From the NCBI GenBank assembly GCA_002269645.1, contig NIVC01001343.1, forward strand, positions 245,956 through 309,955: a stretch of 64,000 nt of DNA, read 5' to 3'. This DNA comes from Macrostomum lignano (lineage: Eukaryota). Positions 10,135-29,400 of this stretch are shown one piece after another (positions within the stretch are counted from its first letter, which is position 1; each line of letters starts with the position of its first letter). The notes beneath the pieces are model-generated. The model made no database searches, was not told the DNA's origin, and saw only the letters and a list, made by a program, of their open reading frames with translations. The translations under genes were made by a program, and so were the position numbers.

Positions 10135-13100
10135 ATGTCCACTGCAACAACCGACACAACCCAGACGCCGAAGACTCGCGTCCTTAGCAACCGCTACCGC
10201 GTGGTTCGCCAAATTGGCAAAGGCGCTTTCGGCACGGTGCACCTTGTTGAAGATTTGCGCAGCTCGGAAGAGAAATTCAAAGTGCTGAAAGAAGTTCAAA
10301 TTGGTGAAGTTGACCCGGATGAAACTCTGGAAGTTGTGCACGAGGCCAAGCTGCTTGGAAAGCTTGATCACTCAGCTATTCTGAAGTTTTACAATTGTTT
10401 TATGGGTAGGTTGGCTCATTAAGTATTTGTTTTCCTTTAAAAACAACTTTTCCCTGAAAAAAGATTGGGATTCCTCGTGGCAGTAAATTTTACAAACCGG
10501 TGACCTTGAAATCGGGATTCCCGTTGGGCAATCTTATAAGTAGGATTTCCTCGCCATTCAGTAGCATGGAAAGTGAGATTTTTTCATTTGATGACATCAT
10601 GGGTGGACTTTTCCATTAAGTGACCTTGAAAGTGAGGATTCTCTTTTGAGTGAAATTAAAAGTAGCTAAGGATGGATTTTCGCTGTGTCCCTGAAAGTAC
10701 GAGCTAGGATTTCCCGCTAAGTGACCTTGAAAGTACGATTTTCCGTCGAGCGACCTTGGAGTCAGGAATTCCGTTGCGCGACCTTAAAAGTAGGATTCCC
10801 CGTTGAGCGACCTTGAAAGTAAAGGCTTTCCAGTAAAGTTGACCTTAAAAGTAGAATTTTCCGGTAACCGACCTTGAAAGAATATAGGATTTCCTATTAA
10901 GCGACCTTGAAAGTAGGATGGTTTTCACTTGTGTGACCTTGAAAGAAATTTCCGCTTAATTACGTTGAAAATGATTCCGCCTTAAGTGACCTTGAAAGTA
11001 GAATTTGACTGTCCACTTGTGGCCTCCGATTTTTATTGATTCTTTTTTCGACAAAAACAACGCAGAGCCGCCGTCGTTTTGCATCGTGACCGAGTACTGC
11101 GACGAAGGCGACCTGGACCAGTGCATCAGCCGTCTGAAACAGGCAGGACACAACCTACCGGTGCAAACCACCATCCGATGGTTCATCCAAATCCTACTAG
11201 GCGTTGACTATTTGCACGGTCGACGAATTTTGCACAGAGATTTGAAAACTAAAAACATATTTTTGAAAAGTGGCACAGTGAAAATTGGCGACTTTGGCAT
11301 CTCGAGGGTGCTGATGAGCAACTCCGATATGGCGTCAACTTTTCTTGGCACGCCGTACTTTATGAGTCCGGAACTGCTCAAGCATGAGGGTGAGCTGGGG
11401 AGATCTGCGGCGTGCCATCTACTTCCCCATTCATTCTCTATTCTTACCTCTATTCTTTCTCTATTCTCACCTCCATACATTCTCTATTCTCACCTCCATT
11501 CATTTTCTATTCTCGCCTCCATACATTCTCTATTCCCACTCCCATTCATTCTCTATTCTCACTCCCATTCATTCTCTATTCTCACTCCCATTCATTCTCT
11601 ATTCTCACTCCCATTCATTCTCTATTCTCACTCCCATTCATTCTCTATTCTCACTCCCATTCATTCCCTATTCTCACTCCCATTCATTCTCTATTCTCAC
11701 TCCCATACATTATCTATTCCCACCTCCATTAATTCTCTATTCTCACCCCATTCATTCTCTATTCCCACTCCCATTCATTCTATTCTCACCCCATTCATTC
11801 TCTATTCCCACTCCCATTCATTCTATTCTCACCTCTATTCATTCTCTATTCTCCCCTCCATTAATTCTCTATTCTCACTCCCATTCATTCTCTATTCTCA
11901 CTCCCATTCATTCTCTATTCTCACCCCCATTCATTCTCTTTTCTCACCTCCATTCATTCTCCATTCTCATCCCATTCATTCTCTATTCTCACCTCCATTC
12001 ATTCTCTACTCTCACCCAAATTCATTCTCTATTCCCACCCGCCCCGACCTGTTCCAGGCTACAACGCCAAAAGCGACATTTGGAGTGTCGGCTGCATTCT
12101 ATACGAGATGTGCGCCCTGGAGCACGCATTCAAAGGCGCTGGTCTGATGGGGATTCTGTTCAGCATCTGTGGCAACCCCTGCCCGGTGATCCCAGACCGC
12201 TACCCTCCCGAGCTGCAGGCGGTTCTGGAGAAGATGCTAGCCAAAGATCCGCAGGACCGACTCAGCGCCAGAGAGGTGCTCAAAGAGCCGTTCATACGCG
12301 AGCAGATGCAGAGCCTGCGCGAGGCTGTTGAGTCTCAGAGCGGTGGCAACCGGCAGCAACAGCTGCTGATGGAGGAGACAATCAACGAAGCCGAAAGCAA
12401 AAACCTACTATCCGTGCTGCAGGAGAAACCAACGCTCAACAGTCTGGAGTTCGAATCCCGAGCGATGGCGGCGGCCGCAGCGGCTGCCGCTGAAGTCACT
12501 CTGAAGCCCAACAGCGACACGGTACGGCAGAAGGTCAAGGGACCCGGCCAGGCCGGTGGAGACTTCAATGCCCTCAGCCCGCACCAGAAGATGCTGTTGC
12601 GAAAGCAACGCGAGGCAGACGACCGCGCCAGAGAGCTGGCCACACAGGCCGCCGAGACGAGCCGTAGAAACGCCGAGCTGGCTAAGAAGTTCGGCAATCG
12701 GACTTTTCGACCGAGCGGCAGCGAAGGCAGAACGGCGTTTCCTCAGCCGCAAGACGACCTGCCAGTGCGGAACCAACGCTTCTTGGAGGAGCAGCAGCAG
12801 CAGAGGCAACAGCAGAAGCACACCGCTTGGGAGTCGCATGACTACGAGCCTCGCCACAATGAAGGTCGCCGAGATTCTGAAGAAGACTATTACGGCAATG
12901 ACGGGGATGACAGCGACGAGGAAGACGATCTGGTGCCGGCCAGTCTGGCTCGACGGCAGCCGACTCGGCCAACTGCCGTGGCTTCAAGCAGAGACGAGCG
13001 GCCCATCACGCCGATGAAAATTGACCTCTATCAGCAGATGAATAGGGCTGGCAGTTTTAAAGAGGCCGCCATGGAGAATGAAGAGCTGGCTGACACCTAC

Positions 13101-15901: not shown

Positions 15902-18741
15902 TCACGATGAGGCACTCAGGAAGCTGTGCCCCAGCAGCTCCGCGGTGTCCGCTCGCTTCCTCGGGTCATAGTCTACGCACCTGAGGTAGAAGTCCTTCAG
16001 GCCGGCTGAGAACCCGTCCGCAATCCGAGGCATCTCCTGCTTCATCAATCTTCGAATGTTAATACTTTCACTTGGCTTGTCCCCATCAGGAGGCTGCATG
16101 GCCGTCATCTCATACACGGTGCAGCCGAAGGCCCACACGTCGGTCTTGGCTGAGTACGGAAGTGATTGGACTTCTATGTCGAACAGCTCCGGAGCCATGA
16201 AGTAGGTGGTGCCTTTTGGACCGAAGCCTGTGCTCAGACCGCTGCTCTTCCCGACCTCCTTGGCCAAACCGAAGTCGATCAGCTTGATGACGCCCTCGTT
16301 GGTGAGCATCACGTTGTTGCAGTTTATATCCCGGTGCAAGATGGCGCCCTCCAGATTGCAGTGCAGGAAGTTCAGACCTGAGCAGATCTGCAGATAAAGT
16401 TGCAACTATTAATTTTGGATGCCAACACACTGATCCCACACTGATCCCTCACCGATTCCACACTGATCCCAGGCTGATCCCACACTGATCCCACACTAAT
16501 CCCATACTGATCCCACACCGATCCCACACTAATCTCACACTGATCTCACACTGATCCCACCCATGCCAGGCAATGCCACAGAACCCAGAGACGCACCTGT
16601 CTGGAGAAGTCCCTGACCCCGGACTCCTTGAACGGCTTGTTCTGACGCTGCATCAGCTCAAAGAGGCTGTGACCCGAGACCAGCTCGGTGAAGATGTACA
16701 GCCCATCCGACTTCTGCTCGCACTTGAGGAACTGCACAATGTTGGGATGTGAAATTCGCTTGAGGATCTCAACTCCCCGCTTCTCCATCAGAATTATCTT
16801 CAGTTTCCCTGCAGCTTGCCTCGCATGGCTCAGTGGTAATTTTTTGACAGCCACCGTCTGGTTGCGGTCTGTGAGAGCCTTGTACACCTTGCCGAATCCA
16901 CCACGGCCGATGAGCTGCTTCTTGTTGTCCTGCCGGATGAAGTCCCAGTCGGTGAAGTTGGGGTCCAGCTGCTTCCTGACGCTGAAAATATGAGGTGAAG
17001 GAATTCGTTAAATTTTGTGTGGCTTGGGGCTTTCTGAGTACTTTGGAGTCACTCAGCCTTCTGCATCACCACCCTTCTGCGTCCCCACCATTCTGTGCCA
17101 CCATATTTTAAGCGCGGACTCACCGAGTCTCCTCAGGCGGTTCCACCTCGGATGCCGAAGTCGGTCCAGGCGGCGGCTCGACGCGGTCCCGAGCTCGCGG
17201 GCGGGGACGCGGAGCTGCAGCTCTGTGGGGGCGAATGAGGGGCGTACCTGAGTACGATGACTTAAATGACTTAAAGAGTAGAATGAAAGTATAACGATCT
17301 TTAAGCTACTCAAAACTCAGGCTGCTGACAAATTAAATGCTTTGTAGAAGTTCTCAGTCAGGACTCACCCAGCTGAGGCGGCAGTCGGCGCTGAGCTGCC
17401 AGCGGGAGGCCAAGAGGCTTCGAGCCGCCGCTGCGTGGAGGAAATCCAGGCCTGCTTTGCTGACCGGTCTGTGTAGCACCGCCGACTCTCAACAGCATCA
17501 GCCGGTGTTCTGCCCCACATGTTCTTCAAGCTGAACATTTCGGCTCCGATTTGGTCAAAAATGAACTGAAGAGAGTCTACTGGCTGATGCTGAGCGGCCC
17601 AATGGACGACCGTGTCACAGCACCAATAGTCAGGAACTGTGAGACAGTCGCTGCCGAGCTCCTTCACCAGCCACTTCAGATTTGAATTGTCAGAATTCAT
17701 AGCAGCAAAATGAAATGTTGTAAAACCCCCTTCTACCTTCAGCCGAAAGCACTCAGTTCCGATCTGTCTCTTGATCCACTCCAGCGACTCGACGCCCTGA
17801 TGTATAGCGGTCAAATGGACGGCCGTGCTACCGTATCTGTCAGGAACTGTGAGACAGTCGCTGTCGAGCTCCTTCACCAGCCACTCCAAATTTGAACCTT
17901 CAGACTTCTGAGCAGCAAAATGAAATGATGCTGTACCACTGTTTGACTTTAGCCGAAAGCAGTCTGTTCCGATCTGTCTCTTGATCCACTCCAGTGACTC
18001 GATGCCCTGATGCTTCGTGGCAAAATGAACGGCCGTGTCACCGTCTCTGTCAGGAACTGTGAGACAGGCGCTGCCGAGCTCCTTCACCAGCCACTTCAGA
18101 TTTGAATTGTCAGACTTCTGAGCAGCAATGTGAAATGCTGTTCTATCACTCTTTGTCTTTAGCCGAAAGCAGTCAGTTCCAATCTGTCTCTTGATCTACT
18201 CCAGTGACTCGATGCCCTGATGCTGAGCGGCCAAATGGACCGCCATGTTACCGGCTTTGTCAGGAACTGTGAGACAGTCGCTGCCGAGCTCCTTCACCAG
18301 CCATTTCAGACAAGAGTTGCTTTTTCTGTTCCCAGCGGCAAAGTGAGCGACTCTCTTTCCACATCTATCGACAATTCTCAAGCAACCTCTGCCTCCCTTC
18401 TCTTTAACCAGCTTCATCCAAGTTTCGTCCTGATGCTGGGCTGCCAAGTGCACTGGAGTCTCACCCCTACCATTTCTTAATTTCAGACATCCGGGTCCGA
18501 ATCTGTCAATCAGTAGCTCCAGGCACGACAATCTCACCGGCTTGCAGGCCACGTGATGGACCAGCGGCATTTTGCGAAGCTCTTCAAAAGGAAAGTCTTG
18601 CTTGTCGAACCCGCCCACCTCCAGCTCGATGTTGCTGCCGACCTCACCGCACAGGAGCTGCAGCTCCTCGCTGTCTCCAGCCTCCAGTGTCGCTCTCAGC
18701 TTCCGCTCCATCTCCATGGATACACTCCAAGCGTTCCCCAT
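15902..18741 (-). pseudogene. Ankyrin-repeat + protein kinase gene, copy A (about 10 ANK repeats, Pro-rich linker, STE/MAP3K-like kinase); in-frame TAG at 18196-18198
   Basis: Exons 17369-18741, 17124-17222, 16597-16981, 15902-16387 splice in frame (781 codons). Kinase motifs GRGGFG, VAVK, HRDINCNN, DFG, APE. TGG>TAG at a Trp position of the repeat; the frame stays open on both sides. Pseudogene status is uncertain. Confidence 0.8.
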
Positions 18742-19739: not shown

Positions 19740-20906
19740 TGTAGTCAGTATGAGTCTTGAAAGAGGCAATGTTTGGGAAGCTGGGAGGAGGCCTATATCC
19801 CCAGCGAGGTCCTGAGATCAATATTTCAAGTTATTCATGGCTCTTCTGAGTTTGGTGGTAGCAGGGACTCTATGGTCGGCGGCCTGCTCCAATCTTTGAG
19901 GTCAAAGCTATGGAACCCTTTTGTGACTTTTTTATGCCATATTTTAACCAGGATCCATATTCCCTCTTTAAACCTGGGCATCTTGCTGGAATCATGCAGT
20001 AAGTAGCTGATTTTAGTGTACTTAGGCGCATCAAGGGAAATCCTGAGCGTCCGGTTTTGGAGGACCTGAAGTTAATTATGAAGTATGTAATGCCGCTCTC
20101 AATGTAAGACCCGTGAATCAGTCTGAGCGCAAGTTAAGTTGGGCGATCCTGGTACTCCGAGCGATCCTTCTTATTGAGTTGAGCCTGGGCATTGTGATGC
20201 CAGCCGTTCTGGATAAAGTTGAGTACATCTAGGAAGACAGCAGAATCAAAGTATTGGATGTCTTCCTGACCAGGTTTGATGGACGGCTTATCAAGACCTG
20301 TGATGTGCGTGATTTCCTTTAAACTTAAAGAGACAGGCTTGCTTTTCGCTGGATTGATAGTGATGCAAACGTCACCCAGCCATTTTTTCTATGTGATGAA
20401 GCAGCCATTGAGTCTCTATCGAGCTGACAAGCACAATGAAGAGGAGTCGAGACAACACCCCACCTTGAGAGGAACGCCAGCAGCCGACTTGAAGGCTTCG
20501 CTGACAGCTCCACCTACCTGAATTCGAATTCCCTGTCGTCAAGGTAACTGGAAACTATATTCTGACCAATGTTGTGAGGAATGTCACATTCGAGAATCCT
20601 TTGCCTAAGATAGCTATTAGCTGCATGCCAGACGCCATCAAAGACACATAATGACGTAAATGGTATAGTTTTTAAGCCTGGAGTATATCCAGCACATCAT
20701 CTGAGAGTCGCAACATGTTGTCGAATGTACAACTGGTCTGCATTGATTATTCCTTTGTTTTCAATTATGATTAGCAGATTTCTTGCAATTACCTTTTCAT
20801 AGAGTTTACACAGGCAAGAGGCTAAACTAATTGGTCTGTAGCTAATTATGTCAGTAGTAGGATCATTGCGCCCACGGTCATAACCTACCAGCACCTCCAC
20901 TGACAA
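19740..20906 (-). mobile_element. Degenerate non-LTR retrotransposon (LINE) reverse transcriptase remnant
   Basis: Frameshifted RT motifs: YRPISLASCLCKLYEKVI (about 20780-20845), AGVP/QGGVLSRLLFIV (about 20433-20480) and post-RT LQVLQNRTLRISLDAPKYTKI (about 19990-20072). Confidence 0.8.
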
Positions 20907-21974: not shown

Positions 21975-22975
21975 TTGACCCTTAACCTCTCAGCAATTCC
22001 CGCATGACCTTTGATCTCTCAGCAATTCCCGCATGACATTTGATCTCTCAGCAATTCCCGCATGACCTTTGATCTCTCAGCAATTCCCGCATGACCTTTG
22101 ATCTCTCAGCAATTCCCCCATGACCTTTGATCTCTCAGCAATTCCCCCATGACCTTTGACCTCTCAGCAATTCCCCCATGACCTTTGATCTCTCAGCAAT
22201 TCCCCCATGACCTTTGACCTCTCAGCAATTCCTGCATGACCTTTGATCTCTCAGCAATTCCCCCATGACCTTTGATCTCTCAGCAATTCCCCCATGATCT
22301 TTGACCTCTCAGCAATTCCCGCATGACCCTAAAACTCTCAGCAATTCCCGCATGACCCTTAAACTCTCAGCAATTCCCGCATGACCTTTGATCTCTCAGC
22401 AATTCCCGCATGACCCTAAAACTCTCAGCAATTCCCCCATTGACCTTTGATCTCTCAGCAATTCCCCCATGACTTTTGATCTCTCAGCAATTCCCGCATG
22501 ACCTTTGAACTCTCAGCAATTCCCCCATGACCTTTGATCTCTCAGAAATTCCCCCATGACTTTTGATCTCTTAGCAATTCCCCCCTGACCTTTGATCTCT
22601 CAGCAATTCCCCCATGACTTTTGATCTCTCAGCAATTCCCGCATGACCTTTGAACTCTCAGCAATTCCCCCATGACCTTTGATCTCTCAGAAATTCCCCC
22701 ATGACTTTTGATCTCTCAGAAATTCCCCCATGACTTTTGATCTCTCAGCAATTCCCGCATGACCTTTGATCTCTCAGCAATTCCCGCATGACCTTTGATC
22801 TCTCAGCAATTCCCTAATGACCTTTGATCTCTCAGAAATTCCCCCCTGACCTTTGATCTCTCAGCAATTCCCGCATGACCTTTGATCTCTCAGCAATTCC
22901 CGCATGACCTTTGACCTCTCAGCAATTCCCGCATGACCTTTGATCTCTCAGCAATTCCCGCATGACCCTTGACCT
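21975..22975. repeat. About 28-bp minisatellite (gacctttgatctctcagcaattcccgcat)
   Basis: Tandem copies. Confidence 0.95.
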
Positions 22976-23034: not shown

Positions 23035-23992
23035 TGGTGACAATCCTGTCTGTGTTGGTGACAATCCTGTCTGTGATGGTGACGATCCTGTCTGTGATGG
23101 TGACGATCCTGTCTGTGATGGTGACAATCCTGTCTGTGATGGTGACAATCCTGTCTGTGATGGTGACAATCCTGTCTGTGATGGTGACAATCCTGTCTGT
23201 GATGGTGTATTTAGGCAGTAAGGCATATTTCATGCATATTTCATTTGCAGCAAATGTATGGCTAAACTGCCAATAACATTTGTCTAGAAAAAAATTTATG
23301 GGCAAAAAATCACTAATGAAGCAGCTAAAAAATAGAATTTCATTCCTTAAGCATGGAAGAGAGAAAGATGGGAGGAGGGAAAGAGGGAAAAGGGAAGAGG
23401 AGAAGAGGATACGGGAGAAGAACAAACAGCGGAAGAAGCAACAGCAAAAAACAAAGCAGCAACAGCGGAGAAGCAAAGCAGCAACAGCGGAGAAGCAAAG
23501 CAGCAACAGCGGAGAAGCAAAGCAGCAACAGCGGAGAAGCAAAGCAGCAACAGCGGAGAAGCAAAGCAGCAACAGCGGAGAAGCAAAGCAGCAACAGCGG
23601 AGAAGCAAAGCAGCAACAGCGGAGAAGCAAAGCAGCAACAGCGGAGAAGCAAAGCAGCAACAGCGGAGAAGCAAAGCAGCAACAGCGGAGAAGCAAAGCA
23701 GCAACAGCGGAGAAGCAAAGCAGCAACAGCAGAGAAACAAAGCAGCAACAGCGGAGAAGCAAAGCAGCAACAGCAGAGAAACAAAGCAGCAACAGCGGAG
23801 AAGCAAAGCAGCAACAGCGGAGAAGCAAAGCAGCAACAGCAGAGAAACAAAGCAGCAACAGCGGAGAAGCAAAGCAGCAACAGCAGAGAAACAAAGCAGC
23901 AACAGCAGAGAAACAAAGCAGCAACAGCAGAGAAACAAAGCAGCAACAGCAGAGAAACAAAGCAGCAACAGCAGAGAAACAAAGCAGCAACT
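23035..23992. repeat. 21-bp array (ggtgacaatcctgtctgtgat) 23035-23205 and 22-bp array (agcaaagcagcaacagcggaga) 23440-23992
   Basis: Tandem copies; they explain several spurious ORFs. Confidence 0.95.
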
Positions 23993-24001
23993 GAAACACA
24001 C

Positions 24002-24322
24002 CTGGCATAACAACCGACCTTCCTTGTTGCCGAAGCTGACATCCGGCACATCAACGCATTTCTGCTCAACGCACTGCTCAATGATGGCCTGTTGCTCTTC
24101 TCCATCAACATCAATGTCTTTGTACTTTTGCTTTTGAACAATCAGATCGACATAAGCGCTAATGAGTTTAGTGATGGAATCGGCTTCGGAAATCTTATAG
24201 CCGTGATTGCTCTGTCAGAGTAGCCGCCAAAATCCAGAGTGAGTCCGTGAACAGTGGCTGCCCATTTCTTCACAGACGTGAGCGGCCATTTCTTTAGAAT
24301 TTGTTTGGTCTTCTGGTCTACG
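24002..24322 (-). pseudogene. Orphan talin-like FERM F3 exon with frameshift
   Basis: VDQKTKQILKKWPLTSVKKWAATVHGLTLDFGGYSD, then in a shifted frame ISEADSITKLISAYVDLIVQKQKYKDIDVDGEEQQAIIEQCV. This parallels the recalled talin F3 sequence VDEKTKEVIQEWSLTNIKRWAASPKSFTLDFGDY...EGEQIAQLIAGYIDIILKKKK. AG acceptor and a plausible GT donor flank it. Confidence 0.75.
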
Positions 24323-25444: not shown

Positions 25445-25742
25445 GGACACTGCGGGTCACGGCAAGTCAGGACACAGCGGGTCACGGCAAGTCAGGACAC
25501 AGCGGGTCACGGCAAGTCAGGACACAGCGGGTCACGGCAAGTCAGGACACAGCGGGTCACGGCAAGTCAGGACACAGCGGGTCACGGCAAGTCAGGACAC
25601 AGCGGGTCACGGCAAGTCAGGACACAACGGGTCACGGCAAGTCAGGACACAACGGGTCACGGCAAGTCAGGACACAGCGGGTCACGGCAAGTCAGGACAC
25701 AGCGGGTCACGGCAAGTCAGGACACAGCGGGTCACGGCAAGC
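25445..25742. repeat. 25-bp minisatellite (gggtcacggcaagtcaggacacagc)
   Basis: Tandem copies. Confidence 0.95.
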
Positions 25743-26271
25743 CAAACGGTGTCTTTATATTTAACTGAGAACTCTTGAGTAAGCACAGGACTTCCTGCTC
25801 CAACAGTTGCTAATAAAAAGTCAGCCCAAAAATCAAATATCAGAGATATTTGATTCTCTGATATACAAGAGATATACAAAAATCAGAGCCGGAAAAAGCG
25901 CCAAACCGGTGGCTGAAAATGTGAAAAGTTCTCGGAAACAGAAAATCTGGAGTAGGCATTGAGCAGTCTGAGCAAATTGGGGAAATTGTGATTGGCTTTG
26001 TGCCAGAGTTTCAAAATCAACATTGATCAGCTTAAAACTGAAATGGCACTCGAGTCAGCACAAAAATGTCTTATTAATTGAAGGGAGCGACCGGTTAACC
26101 AAACCCGCAGTCAAATAAATAAAATTTTAATTCCGAATCGCAGCCGAATAAACAAAATTATGATTGGATAATTAATCTGGGCAACGAGTAGCAGCAGGAT
26201 GATCGATAGACAAAACGATAAAAATTCTAATCTAAGCAGTTCGAACAAACAAAGCAGTCGGATAAAAAAAG

Positions 26272-26400
26272 GGCAATCGGATGAACAAAAACGGCAATCG
26301 GATGAACAAAAACGGCAATCGGATGAACAAAAACGGCAATCGGATGAACAAAAACGGCAATCGGATGAACAAAAACGGCAATCGGATAAACAAAAACAGA
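26272..26400. repeat. 21-bp minisatellite (ggcaatcggatgaacaaaaac)
   Basis: Tandem copies just 3' of ANK-kinase B. Confidence 0.9.
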
Positions 26401-26469: not shown

Positions 26470-29400
26470 TCATGATGAGGCACTCAGGAAGCTGTGCCGC
26501 AGCAGCTCCGCGGTGTCCGCTCGCTTTTCAGGGTCATAGTCTACGCACCTGAGGTAGAAGTCCTTCAGGCCGGCTGAGAACCCGTCCGCAATCCGAGGCA
26601 TCGCCCGCCCTCCGCACCTCACGATGCCGATCCGGAACTGCTGAACGTTCGCGTCAGGAGGCTCCATAGCCGTCAGCTCATACACGGTGCAGCCGAAGGC
26701 CCACACGTCGGTCTTGGCTGAGTACGGAATCAAGTTTTCCTCGCCCATGAACAGCTCGGGCGCCATGAAGTAGGGAGTGCCTTTGGGATCGACGCCTGTG
26801 CTCAGGCCGCAGGTGTCGACGATCTCCTTAGCGAGGCCGAAGTCGATTAGCTTGATGACGCCCTCGTTGTTGAGCATCATATTTGAGCTCTTGATGTCAC
26901 GGTGCAAGATGGCGCCCTGCGGCTGGCAGTGCAGGAAGTTCAGGCCTGAGCAGATCTGCAGGGGAGCAGTTTTAAGCAGTCATAAAATTGCATTTATTCA
27001 TTCTGGATCCCTCCCACACTGACCTGATGATTGATCCCACACTCATCCCACACTAATCCCACACTCATCCCGCACTGATCCCACGCTGATCCCACACTCG
27101 TCTGACATTGATCCCACACTGATCCCACACTGATCCCACACTGATCCGACACTGATACCACACTGATCCCACACTGATCCCACACTGATCCCACACTGAT
27201 CCCACACTAATCTCACACTGATCTCACACTGATCCCACCCATGCCAGGCAATGCCACAGAACCCAGAGACGCACCTGTCTGGAGAAGTCCCTGACCCCGG
27301 ACTCCTTGAACGGCTTGTTCTGACGCTGCATCAGCTCAAAGAGGCTGTGACCCGAGACCAGCTCGGTGAAGATGTACAGCCCATCCGACTTCTGCTCGCA
27401 CTTGAGGAACTGCAGAATGTTGGGATGCGAGAGTCGCTTGAGGATCTCAACTCCCCGCTTCTCCATCTCGACGGCTTTCTGCAGCTTCCCCGATTGGCCG
27501 GTGCCGCTCAGGGGCAGCACCTTGACAGCCACCGTCTGGTTGCGGTCTGTGAGGGCCTTGTACACCTCACTGAATCCACCACGACCGATGAGCTGCTTCT
27601 GGTTGTCCTGCAGGATGAAGTTCCAGTCGGTGAAGCTTGGGTCCAGCTGATTCTTTGTGCTGAAAACACGAGGTGAAGGACTTCGATAAATTTTGTTTTG
27701 CTTGGGGCTTTCTGAGTACTTTGGAGTCACTCAGCCTTTGCGTCACCACCCTTCTGCTTCAACACTCGGTCTTTGCTGAGTACGGAATCGAGTTGCCCTT
27801 CCCCATGAGCATCTCGGGCGCCATGAAGTGCCAGGTGCCTTCTGGCTGGTTGCCTGCGCTCAGGCTGCAGGTGTTGAAGAGTTCACAAACTGCCGCCTCA
27901 TAATCTCTCACCGAGTCTCCTCAGGCAGTCCGACCGCAGTCGGCCCAGGCGGCTGGACGCTCTCCCGAGCTTGTGGGCGGGGACGCAGAGCTGCAGCGCT
28001 GTAGGAAGAGTTTTACGAGTGAGCTCGTTAAACATGTCTGGGTCGCCAAGACGGCACTTAAACTCTGCTAATGCTTCATGTGAAAGAAGCCTTTGCAGAT
28101 TGAGCTTTGGGTGGCGCTATGGGGACATTGGGGCGCGATTGGGAGATTGCGGCGCCATGAAGACATTGGAGGCTCTCAAATTATTTAAGTGCCGATATTT
28201 TTAACATCAAACGAAGTAAAATTCCTGCTACGAGTAAAATCGGAGAGTTTGAAACTTTGGAGAGTTTGATGGCACTTGAACTCACTGATGCTTTGTGTTA
28301 AAAAACTGCAGATTGAGCTGTGGGTGGGGGGGGGGTTGGGGGCCCCATGAAAAGATTGGGGGCGCTTTGGGGAGATTGGAGGCCCCATGAGGAGGTTGGG
28401 GCGCCATGAGCAGCTGCCCTGACTAATTCGTGACGCCCTCGCTTGACTGCGGCGCTGTTGAAAATTTCAGGGCGCCGATCATCAAAACGCAATGAACTTT
28501 CGTCAAATAACATTTTCAGTATTTTTAATATCAGGCAGCAGCTCTCAGTCAGGACTCACCCAGCTGAGGCGGCAGTCGGCGCTGAGCTGCCAGCGGGAGG
28601 CCGAGAGGCTTCGAGCCGTCGCTGCGTGGAAATCCAGGCCCGCTTTGCTGACTGGTCTGTGCGGCACCGATCGCTCTCAACAACATCAACCGGTGTTTCG
28701 CCCCTATTGTTCTTCAGGCTGAACATTTCGACTCCGATTTGTTCAAAAATGAACTGAAGAGAGTCGACTGGCTGACGCTCAGCGGCCAAATGGACGGCCG
28801 TGTTACCGTCTTTGTCAGGAACTGTGAGACAGTCGCTGCCGAGCTCCTTCACCAGCCACTTCAGATTTGAATTGTCAGAATTCTGAGCAGCAAAGTGAGA
28901 TGCTGTTCTATCACACTTTGTCTTCAGCCGAAAGCAGTCAGTTCCGATCAGTCTCTTGATCCACTCTAGCGACTCGACGCCCTGATGTATAGCGGTAAAA
29001 TGGACGGCCGTGTCACCGTCTTCGTTCGGAACTGTGAGACAGTCGCTACCGAGCTTCTTCACCAGCCACTCCAGATTTGAATTGTCAGACTTCTGAGCAG
29101 CAAAGTGAAATGCTGTTTCATCACACCAACCATTCAGTCGAAAGGAGTCAGTTCCGATATGTCTCTTGATCAACTCCAGCGACTCGATGCCCTGATGCTG
29201 AGCGGCCAAATGGACGGCCGTGTCACCGTATTCGTTGGGAACTGTGAGACAGTCGCTGCCGACTTCCTTCACCAGCCACTTTAGACAAGAGTTGCTTTTT
29301 CTGTTCATAGCAGCGAAGTGAGCGACTGTGTGTGCCGATCCATCGGCAAATCCCAAGCAGTCTCTGGCTCCCTTCTCTTTAACCAGCTCCATCCAAGTTT

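What the first reader, a model, noticed from the sequence alone, without database searches (positions are those of the whole stretch)
27759..27884. Orphan third kinase activation-segment variant embedded in intron 2 of copy B
On the minus (sense) strand the intron reads ELFNTCSLSAGNQPEGTWHFMAPEMLMGKGNSIPYSAKTEC*. This is homologous to the real segments EIVDTCGLSTGVDPKGTPYFMAPELFMGEENLIPYSAKTDVW (B) and EVGKSSGLSTGFGPKGTTYFMAPELFDIEVQSLPYSAKTDVW (A), but matches neither. The equivalent intron of copy A lacks it, although the downstream intron sequence (gcagaagggtggtga) is shared. It covers almost exactly the variable activation loop to alphaF segment. It could be a templated insertion from another paralog or a donor cassette for gene conversion (inference). 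It is not in the ORF track.
Basis: seen in the sequence. Interest (0 to 1): 0.72.

Follow-up and report, generated by a model that had tools for sequence, protein, structure and literature searches.

The report
Decaying kinase-exon fragment copied into intron
A 119-base piece of a kinase exon was copied long ago into an upstream intron of a flatworm ankyrin-kinase gene, probably during repair of a DNA break, and has drifted as non-coding DNA in nine gene copies since, so it is a molecular fossil rather than a working part.

Summary
Window 27762-27880 (minus strand), in intron 2 of Macrostomum lignano gene BOX15_Mlig024086g1 (copy B), copies exon-4 nucleotides 134-253, which encode the kinase activation segment.

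It is neither an orphan nor a one-off. Its sequence type is the normal activation segment of another paralog lineage (UniProt models P0005/P0015, 90% aa identity; copy B's own exon gives 60%). In P0005 that gene sits in the B position of a syntenic duplicate of this tandem array.

The same insertion, with the same 5' junction, occurs in nine gene copies on six contigs. Copy A and two others keep the empty site.

Copy B has the most complete version. The other eight share a 1-nt insertion, a 30-nt deletion and a 13-47-unit 16-nt minisatellite. Substitutions fall 4:3:4 over codon positions, against 4:4:14 in the real exons.

The 24-nt filler ahead of the fragment holds a 12-nt inverted copy of the gene's own exon-1 end (p about 0.005).

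Best reading: one old, complex templated insertion at a repaired break, now decaying neutrally. I found no conversion tract from it, no 5' homology flank, no RNA family and no unusual fold. Low interest.

The family itself is strongly mosaic around two hypervariable islands, and that is the more interesting by-product.

The parts
27762..27880 (-). Core of the intronic cassette: a direct-orientation copy of exon-4 nt 134-253 (activation loop, P+1 loop, APE motif to the start of alphaF), with a 1-nt deletion near its 3' end.
   Evidence: 81% nt identity to B exon 4, 89% to P0008-type exon 4; 90% aa identity to C-type P0005/P0015.
27759..27761 (-). TGA that ends the cassette's kinase-frame ORF. 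It lies at the 3' junction.
27881..27905 (-). About 24-25 nt of 'filler' between the exon-2 donor (GGTGAG) and the cassette. It is absent from empty-site introns and shared by all nine cassette-bearing copies.
27889..27900 (-). 12-nt core of the filler (TGAGGCGGCAGT). It is the exact reverse complement of the 3' end of exon 1 of the same gene.
   Evidence: a match this long occurs in 79/20000 shuffles and in 97/20000 real 25-mers
28565..28576 (-). Putative template of the filler core: ACTGCCGCCTCA, 5 nt before the exon-1 donor and 670 nt upstream of the insertion. It is conserved at the equivalent place in eight of the family's gene copies in hand besides copy B.
27660..27911 (-). Intron 2 of copy B (GT...AG), which hosts the insertion.
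   Evidence: spliced model = P0002
27912..27998 (-). Exon 2 of copy B (linker). The insertion begins 6 nt after its donor G, and the donor is preserved.
26703..26822 (-). The functional counterpart in copy B exon 4 (EIVDTCGLSTGVDPKGTPYFMAPELFMGEENLIPYSAKTD).
17084..17118 (-). Empty site in intron 2 of copy A: about 35 nt stand where B has about 147 nt.
27742..27757 (-). Single unit of the 16-nt minisatellite (GCAGAAGGGTGGTGAC) directly 3' of the cassette. It is expanded to 13-47 units in the other eight cassette-bearing introns.
27864..27873 (-). Acceptor-like ACCTGCAG|C inside the cassette (AG = 27865-27866). It resembles the family's real intron-3 acceptors, and if used it would read the cassette in frame from exon 2 to the TGA.
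   Evidence: Frame worked out. Inference only; no transcript evidence.

Best explanation
The feature is the relic of one old, complex templated insertion (an insertion with a small deletion) made when a break just 3' of the exon-2 splice donor was repaired.

What was inserted. About 145 nt replaced some 17-38 nt of intron. The patch has two parts:
(i) about 24 nt of filler, whose core is a 12-nt inverted copy of the gene's own exon-1 end;
(ii) a 119-nt direct copy of the middle of exon 4, carrying the 'C-type' activation segment.

Likely donor. It was either a neighbouring C-type paralog or the host lineage's own exon 4 at a time when that exon was C-type. Segment types in this family are old and are reshuffled among paralogs.

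What happened next. The splice donor survived, so the insertion was harmless. It was then carried along as the gene family expanded, or was spread by unequal exchange, into at least nine gene copies. It has since decayed as ordinary intron DNA. Copy B happens to retain the fullest version. It does nothing today.

Shown: the homology, the single shared junction, the empty sites, the C-type affinity, the lesions, and the flat codon-position spectrum.
Inferred: the repair mechanism, the identity of the donor, and the absence of function.
For: Homology and position.

Source type. The fragment is 90% aa identical to P0005/P0015 (36/40). Using the other copies to infer the ancestral cassette gives 23/24 identity over the shared part.

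Synteny. P0005 is a fused model. Its 'linker' matches the B-A intergenic region (window 24002-24088 and 20464-20535), and its second gene matches copy A at 91%. So a C-type gene sits in the B position of a syntenic duplicate array.

Single event. All nine copies have an identical junction, GGTGAG + filler + cassette. Empty sites remain in copy A, the P0008 gene and L005 gene 1.

Neutral decay.
- A 1-nt insertion and a 30-nt deletion are shared by eight copies.
- Three copies have a 6-nt duplication, and L009 has a 5-nt deletion.
- The minisatellite has 13-47 units in those copies against 1 in B.
- Substitutions fall 4:3:4 by codon position, against 4:4:14 for the same codons in the host genes' real exons.
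- Variable columns are about 12% in the cassette, about 12% in the filler and about 11% in exon 2 (my count on the alignment).

Patchwork templates. The filler holds a 12-nt inverted copy of the exon-1 end, p about 0.004-0.005.

Fit to the known class. Templated insertions are copies of other genomic DNA pasted at breaks, about 10 bp to over 1 kb (PMC12214859). Alt-EJ/SD-MMEJ leaves direct or inverted repeat motifs (PMC7407515).

Other points. There are no transposon termini, no Rfam match, and folding is no better than shuffles, z=+0.48. The annotated mRNA product excludes the cassette.
Against: - I could not obtain the donor's DNA, so source identity rests on protein models from an older assembly.
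- Junction microhomology is not clear.
- The 9-nt inverted repeat that brackets the B cassette may be coincidental, because its 3' arm aligns with a minisatellite unit in the other copies.
- The 12-nt filler match is 11/12 in the other eight copies.
- The family exchanges segments, so the nine copies may owe their cassette partly to conversion or unequal crossing-over rather than simple descent.
- Absence of function is inferred from sequence decay only. I examined no expression data, and the cassette has a good acceptor-like site.
Confidence: 0.78

Rival explanations
1. Silent donor cassette. The intronic copy is kept as a template from which the variable activation segment of exon 4, in this or other paralogs, is rewritten by gene conversion. 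This would diversify kinase specificity, in the manner of pseudo-V genes or pilS/VSG/vls cassettes.
For: The cassette overlaps the hypervariable island of exon 4. The family is clearly mosaic, with island types discordant with their flanks, and P0008 has a recombinant island that is C-type at the 5' end and V-type at the 3' end. A C-type exon exists that is 90% identical to the cassette.
Against: - There is no conserved 5' flank to anchor conversion. The 28-nt 3' flank is deleted in eight of nine copies.
- Frameshift and indels have accumulated, and the codon spectrum is 4:3:4.
- There is only one cassette per gene, and all are of one type.
- None of the seven complete host genes shows a C-type patch in exon 4.
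- C-type exons have Ile2, Glu29 and Asp40, not the cassette's Leu2, Lys29 and Glu40.
- Ordinary exon-to-exon conversion among tandem paralogs explains the mosaicism.
Confidence: 0.04
2. Cryptic, poison or alternative exon. The cassette's ACCTGCAG|C acceptor is used in some transcripts, reading in frame from exon 2 into the cassette and stopping at TGA 27759-27761. This would give an ankyrin-only truncated protein or an NMD target that tunes expression.
For: The acceptor-like site closely matches real intron-3 acceptors of the family (CCACCTGCAG|A), is retained in all nine copies, and is in phase with exon 2 (frame). One old MAKER model (P0030) reads part of the cassette and minisatellite as coding.
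Against: - No family-type donor (GTGAG/GTGCG) follows the cassette. The best candidates are GTGACT and GTGTTG.
- The TGCAG is simply the Cys-Ser codons of the C-type source.
- Downstream sequence differs completely among copies (30-nt deletion, minisatellite), so any product is not conserved.
- P0030 has exon 1 and exon 2 out of frame and is a poor model.
- The annotated product of copy B skips the cassette.
Confidence: 0.08
3. Gene-fragment capture by a mobile element (Pack-TE, Helitron-like or similar), or a leftover of a larger unequal-crossover rearrangement between tandem paralogs.
For: The genome is rich in repeats and transposons: the window gives 46 tandem-repeat rows, and a retroelement pol gene lies in L011. 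Tandem arrays of the family exist.
Against: - No terminal inverted repeats or target-site duplication flank the 145 nt. The only bracketing repeat is a 9-mer, partly inside the cassette.
- The unit was found only in intron 2 of this family, within about 320 kb examined.
- The filler derives from the same gene.
- Both intron flanks are collinear with the empty-site introns, which a crossover product would not be.
Confidence: 0.05
4. Assembly artefact (a chimeric long-read consensus).
For: The family is repetitive, and the older ML2 assembly gives frameshifted models.
Against: Nine diverged copies on six different contigs share the junction.
Confidence: 0.01

Closest known systems
Templated (copy-paste) insertions at repaired double-strand breaks, including complex alt-EJ/SD-MMEJ or MMBIR-type patchwork insertions ('filler DNA')
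   Same: The inserted DNA is a copy of sequence elsewhere in the genome. Its size (about 145 nt) is inside the reported ~10 bp to >1 kb range (PMC12214859). A small deletion at the site accompanies it. It is a patchwork of at least two templates, one of them inverted. It has no transposon hallmarks.
   Different: It is seen only as an old, fixed germline event inherited by nine paralogs, so the mechanism is inferred. Junction microhomologies are not clear. The donor is a coding exon of the same gene family, possibly the same gene.
Silent gene-conversion donor cassettes (chicken Ig pseudo-V, Neisseria pilS, Borrelia vls, trypanosome VSG)
   Same: It is a promoterless partial copy of a hypervariable coding segment, lying in cis to an expressed copy, in a family that shows mosaic segment ancestry.
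   Different: It is a single cassette of one type, it has no 5' homology flank, it is decaying by frameshift and deletion, and no conversion tract can be traced to it.
Tandem exon duplication / mutually exclusive exons
   Same: It is a second copy of exon-derived sequence inside an intron of the same gene.
   Different: It is an internal exon fragment without the exon's own splice sites, and it lies two introns upstream of the parent exon, ahead of the kinase N-lobe exon.
RIPK4/ANKK1-like ankyrin-repeat kinases (for the host gene only)
   Same: The host gene combines a protein-kinase domain with ankyrin repeats.
   Different: Here the ankyrin repeats are N-terminal to the kinase. The family is a Macrostomum-specific expansion: outside M. 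lignano, the best hits are at most 35% identical over the kinase domain. I did not test orthology.

Membership tests
Templated insertion at a repaired DNA break | The inserted sequence is a copy of DNA present elsewhere in the genome | tested here: met
   119 nt equal exon-4 nt 134-253. Identity is 89% nt to P0008-type exons and 90% aa to C-type P0005/P0015.
Templated insertion at a repaired DNA break | Size about 10 bp to >1 kb (PMC12214859) | tested here: met
   About 145 nt in total.
Templated insertion at a repaired DNA break | An empty site exists in relatives, and the flanks are collinear | tested here: met
   Copy A, the P0008 gene and L005 gene 1 align on both sides and lack the insertion.
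Templated insertion at a repaired DNA break | Patchwork of several templates, or a direct/inverted repeat motif at the junctions (SD-MMEJ signature, PMC7407515) | tested here: inconclusive
   A 12-nt inverted copy of the exon-1 end lies in the filler, p about 0.005. The 9-nt inverted repeat at the cassette ends is possibly coincidental. No clear microhomology is visible after this much divergence.
Templated insertion at a repaired DNA break | No transposon termini or target-site duplication | tested here: met
Silent gene-conversion donor cassette | Conserved homology on both sides of the variable segment | tested here: not met
   Homology starts at exon-4 nt 134, inside the variable island. 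The 28-nt 3' flank survives only in B and is deleted in eight of nine copies.
Silent gene-conversion donor cassette | Expressed copies show tracts derived from the cassette | tested here: not met
   Exon 4 of the seven complete host genes (B, P0007, P0123, P0003, P0001, P0121, P0124) is V- or F-type with no C-type patch. C-type exons lack the cassette-specific residues. The sample is limited to the loci I could fetch.
Silent gene-conversion donor cassette | The cassette is maintained: open frame and coding-like substitution pattern | tested here: not met
   Frameshift and indels are present, and changes by codon position are 4:3:4 against 4:4:14 in the real exons.
Duplicated / mutually exclusive exon | A whole exon with its own splice sites, adjacent to its parent | tested here: not met
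   It is an internal fragment. The true exon continues on both sides where the cassette does not, and the cassette lies two introns upstream.
Poison / cryptic exon | Usable acceptor and donor, and inclusion seen in transcripts | tested here: inconclusive
   The acceptor-like site is good and is in phase. No family-type donor follows it. Transcript evidence cannot be tested with these tools.
Transposon-carried gene fragment | Terminal repeats or TSD, and copies at unrelated loci | tested here: not met
   No termini were found. Within about 320 kb of fetched sequence, the unit occurs only in intron 2 of this family. I did not search the whole genome.

The most novel reading that the evidence does not exclude
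The Macrostomum ankyrin-kinase family runs a segmental gene-conversion system that shuffles two short hypervariable islands of the substrate-binding surface (activation/P+1 loop and the alphaF-alphaG region) among paralogs. On this reading, intronic partial copies such as this one are, or once were, silent donors in that system, and copy B's intact version is still able to donate.
Probability: 0.04. Interest if true: 0.8.

Novelty: new member of a known kind. Interest (0 to 1): 0.27.

Why it matters
By itself it matters little. It is a clean, datable example of a patchwork templated insertion fixed in an animal germline and then multiplied by gene-family expansion. It shows that an apparently 'orphan' coding-like ORF in an intron can be a fossil of another paralog's exon.

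It has two practical uses:
- Annotation. At least one public model (P0030) wrongly reads the cassette as coding.
- History of the family. The shared junction and the nested indels make good rare-genomic-change markers.

The family context may matter more. Paralogs are 97-100% identical across most of the kinase domain yet fall into deeply divergent types at two short islands on the substrate-binding face. That pattern suggests concerted evolution with selection for, or exchange of, specificity-determining segments.

Tried and rejected
- Searching the 41-aa peptide in the 5.8-billion-protein collection found nothing. This negative is uninformative: P0005 shares more than 20 five-residue words with the query, so the index misses short queries.
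- Attempts to get DNA of the C-type source all failed. P0015 is not on record, no annotated Mlig_3_7 protein matches either half of P0005, and the members of 90% clusters are all V- or F-type. All 12 contig look-ups were then used.
- The whole-exon duplication idea was rejected, because homology is internal to the exon.
- The transposon-capture idea was rejected, because there are no termini.
- The structured-RNA idea was rejected, with no Rfam hit and z=+0.48.
- The 9-nt inverted repeat bracketing the cassette looked at first like a snap-back signature. I downgraded it once the nine-copy alignment showed that its 3' arm aligns with a minisatellite unit.
- dN/dS in the activation segment is only modestly raised (median 0.62 against 0.39). 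A few pairs exceed 1 but rest on very small counts, so I make no claim of positive selection.
- I did not use P0030's apparent inclusion of the cassette as evidence of exonisation, because that model has upstream exons out of frame.

Full report
**What is there.** It matches the true activation segments of copy B (E=7e-14) and copy A (E=1.5e-8) within the window. At nucleotide level it is 80-81% identical to copy B's exon 4 over 120 nt.

The window comes from the flatworm Macrostomum lignano. Splicing four exons (29698-28560, 27998-27912, 27659-27275, 26955-26470, all GT-AG) gives a 698-aa protein with ankyrin repeats and a protein-kinase domain. This protein is 100% identical to the annotated BOX15_Mlig024086g1. 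The fragment therefore lies in intron 2 (27660-27911) and is excluded from the annotated product.

Strict homology runs from 27880 to 27762 and corresponds to exon-4 nucleotides 134-253 of 486. On both sides the real exons continue (…IKLIDFGLAKE and DVWAFGCTVYE…) where the intron copy does not. It is an internal exon fragment, not a duplicated exon.

Copy A's intron 2 aligns on both sides and has about 35 nt where B has about 147.

**It is not an orphan type.** Among the roughly 35 M. lignano paralogs returned by the protein search, two UniProt models from the older ML2 assembly, P0005 and P0015, carry EIFNTCSLSAGNQPKGTWHFMAPEMLMGEGNSIPYSAKTD as their genuine activation segment. That is 36/40 identical to the intron copy, against 24/40 for copy B's own exon.

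The P0008-type exons, which are C-type-like in their 5' half, are 89% identical to the fragment at nucleotide level.

P0005 is a fusion of two tandem genes:
- Its 'linker' matches the intergenic region between copies B and A of this window (24002-24088 and 20464-20535).
- Its second gene matches copy A at 91%.

So a C-type gene occupies the B position in a syntenic duplicate of this same array. I could not obtain DNA for any C-type gene.

**It is not a one-off.** I fetched eleven loci that carry family members. The same unit sits in nine gene copies on six contigs, always directly after the exon-2 donor: GGTGAG, then about 24 nt of non-homologous filler, then the fragment. The nine are copy B, the genes for P0007, P0123, P0003, P0001, P0121 and P0124, and two partial gene copies.

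Copy A, the P0008 gene and L005 gene 1 have exon 2 but an empty site. Five further genes have no recognisable exon 2. One shared junction means one ancestral event.

**It is decaying.** Copy B has the fullest version. The other eight share several lesions:
- a 1-nt insertion, so that APEMLMG becomes APEDAHG;
- a 30-nt deletion that removes NSIPYSAKTE;
- an expansion of the adjacent 16-nt minisatellite to 13-47 units, against one unit in B.

Three copies add a 6-nt duplication, and one adds a 5-nt deletion.

Over the 24 codons shared by five representative copies, the minimum numbers of changes at codon positions 1, 2 and 3 are 4, 3 and 4. The same codons in the real exon 4 of the same host genes give 4, 4 and 14. 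By my count on the alignment, the share of variable columns in the cassette (about 12%) equals that of the adjoining filler (about 12%) and of exon 2 (about 11%).

There is no Rfam match and no unusual folding, z=+0.48.

**How it probably arose.** The filler is not random. Its core, TGAGGCGGCAGT (27889-27900), is the exact reverse complement of the last nucleotides of exon 1 of the same gene (28565-28576), 670 nt upstream. A match of that length occurs in 0.4-0.5% of shuffled or real control 25-mers.

The insertion replaced 17-38 nt of the empty-site sequence, and it has no terminal repeats or target-site duplication.

A patchwork of an inverted local snippet and a 119-nt direct copy of an exon, pasted with a small deletion, is what error-prone break repair or template switching produces. 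Templated insertions are described as copies of other genomic DNA pasted at breaks, about 10 bp to over 1 kb (PMC12214859). SD-MMEJ is described as leaving direct or inverted repeat motifs (PMC7407515).

A perfect 9-nt inverted repeat brackets the B cassette and could be such a motif. However, its 3' arm aligns with a minisatellite unit in the other copies, so I do not rely on it.

The mechanism is inferred. The donor could be a neighbouring C-type paralog, or the host lineage's own exon 4 before that exon's island was replaced.

**Why the second donor is plausible: the family is mosaic.** P0007 is 97-99% identical to P0003 in exon 3 and in the conserved parts of exon 4. In two islands (exon-4 nt 130-225 and 298-363) identity drops to 67% and 61%, and there P0007 resembles copy A instead (84% and 79%).

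Synonymous divergence inside the activation segment reaches 0.85 for pairs whose flanks show 0.30. Segment types are therefore older than their flanks, and they are exchanged or retained independently of them.

**The gene-conversion donor idea.** The evidence I could gather speaks against it:
- The cassette starts inside the variable island, so it has no 5' anchor.
- Its 28-nt 3' anchor is deleted in eight of nine copies.
- It is frameshifted and evolves without coding constraint.
- Each gene has a single cassette, and all are of one type.
- None of the seven complete host genes has any C-type patch in exon 4.
- The C-type exons lack the cassette-specific residues.

The family-wide mosaicism is explained by ordinary exon-to-exon exchange among tandem paralogs.

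**The cryptic-exon idea.** The cassette contains ACCTGCAG|C, which is very like the family's genuine intron-3 acceptors. It is in phase with exon 2 and would run to the TGA at 27759-27761. But no family-type donor follows it, the downstream sequence is not conserved among copies, and the one public model that reads it as coding (P0030) is out of frame upstream. Only transcript data can settle this.

**Verdict.** The 'donor cassette' half is not.

The feature is a new instance of a known kind of event and appears to have no present function. Interest is low. The hypervariable, mosaic islands of the kinase family are the more promising lead.

Noticed in passing
window 26470-26955 (copy B exon 4), 15905-16387 (copy A exon 4), and exon 4 of the genes in L001-L011: Two short hypervariable islands (exon-4 nt ~130-225, the activation/P+1 loop, and nt ~298-363, the alphaF-alphaG region) sit in otherwise 97-100% identical kinase domains. 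They fall into at least three deeply divergent types (V, F, C) whose distribution conflicts with the flanks. For example, P0007 matches P0003 in the flanks but matches copy A in the islands. This suggests concerted evolution together with retention or exchange of specificity segments.
   Followed up: partly
window 20464-20535 and 24002-24088 (minus strand); protein P0005: The UniProt model P0005 (ML2 assembly) fuses a C-type gene, spurious 'exons' that match the B-A intergenic region, and an A-like gene (91% to copy A). A syntenic duplicate of this tandem array therefore exists in which the B-position gene carries the C-type activation segment.
   Followed up: partly
window 17700-18711 (copy A exon 1): Copy A is intact from the end of exon 1 through exon 4. 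Going upstream in that frame, the open frame breaks near 17700-17740, although the ankyrin region (17740-18711) is open in a single frame. This could be a frameshift, an extra intron or an assembly error. I did not find copy A among the annotated proteins returned.
   Followed up: partly
L005 2677-3158: Exon 4 of L005 gene 1 (P0008-like) has a 1-nt deletion that frameshifts the kinase domain at the activation segment, so it is probably a pseudogene.
   Followed up: no
L002 12436-27255 versus L011 12436-13022: Intron 2 of the P0001 gene is about 14.8 kb in L002 but about 0.6 kb in its near-identical counterpart, the P0121 gene in L011. Both loci also carry an upstream fragment consisting only of exon 2, cassette and minisatellite (L002 3569-3771, L011 3963-4165). 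I did not examine the large insertion.
   Followed up: no
window 27757-27765 and 27871-27879: A perfect 9-nt inverted repeat (CTTCAACAC ... GTGTTGAAG on the sense strand) brackets the copy-B cassette almost exactly. About one such repeat is expected by chance in the 650 nt scanned, and the 3' arm aligns with a minisatellite unit in other copies.
   Followed up: yes
window 1-64000; for example 27032-27238 (11-nt unit, intron 3 of B), 26243-26397 (21-nt unit, just 3' of B's stop), 21976-22972, 23433-23991, 25445-25741: The window is crowded with minisatellites: 46 TRF rows with score >=200, mostly with periods of 11-30 nt. Several lie in introns and flanks of the kinase genes. The insertion site itself adjoins a 16-nt minisatellite, so the locus may be prone to breakage.
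   Followed up: no
window 11191-12296 (+ strand): A second, unrelated kinase-like coding region (GTPYFMSPELLKHEGEL; 30-37% identical to copy B exon 4) lies on the opposite strand. It is interrupted by a 23-nt minisatellite at 11425-12040, presumably within an intron.
   Followed up: no
protein P0030 (ML2 model of a P0007-like gene): This public gene model reads part of the intronic cassette and the 16-nt minisatellite as coding sequence (…AKGTWLFTAAEDAHDKRVVTQKGGG…), with exons 1 and 2 out of frame. It is an annotation artefact caused by the cassette.
   Followed up: partly
L011 19926-23864: A 1312-aa ORF with reverse transcriptase, RNase H and integrase domains (an LTR-retrotransposon pol) lies about 6 kb downstream of the P0121 kinase gene.
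   Followed up: no
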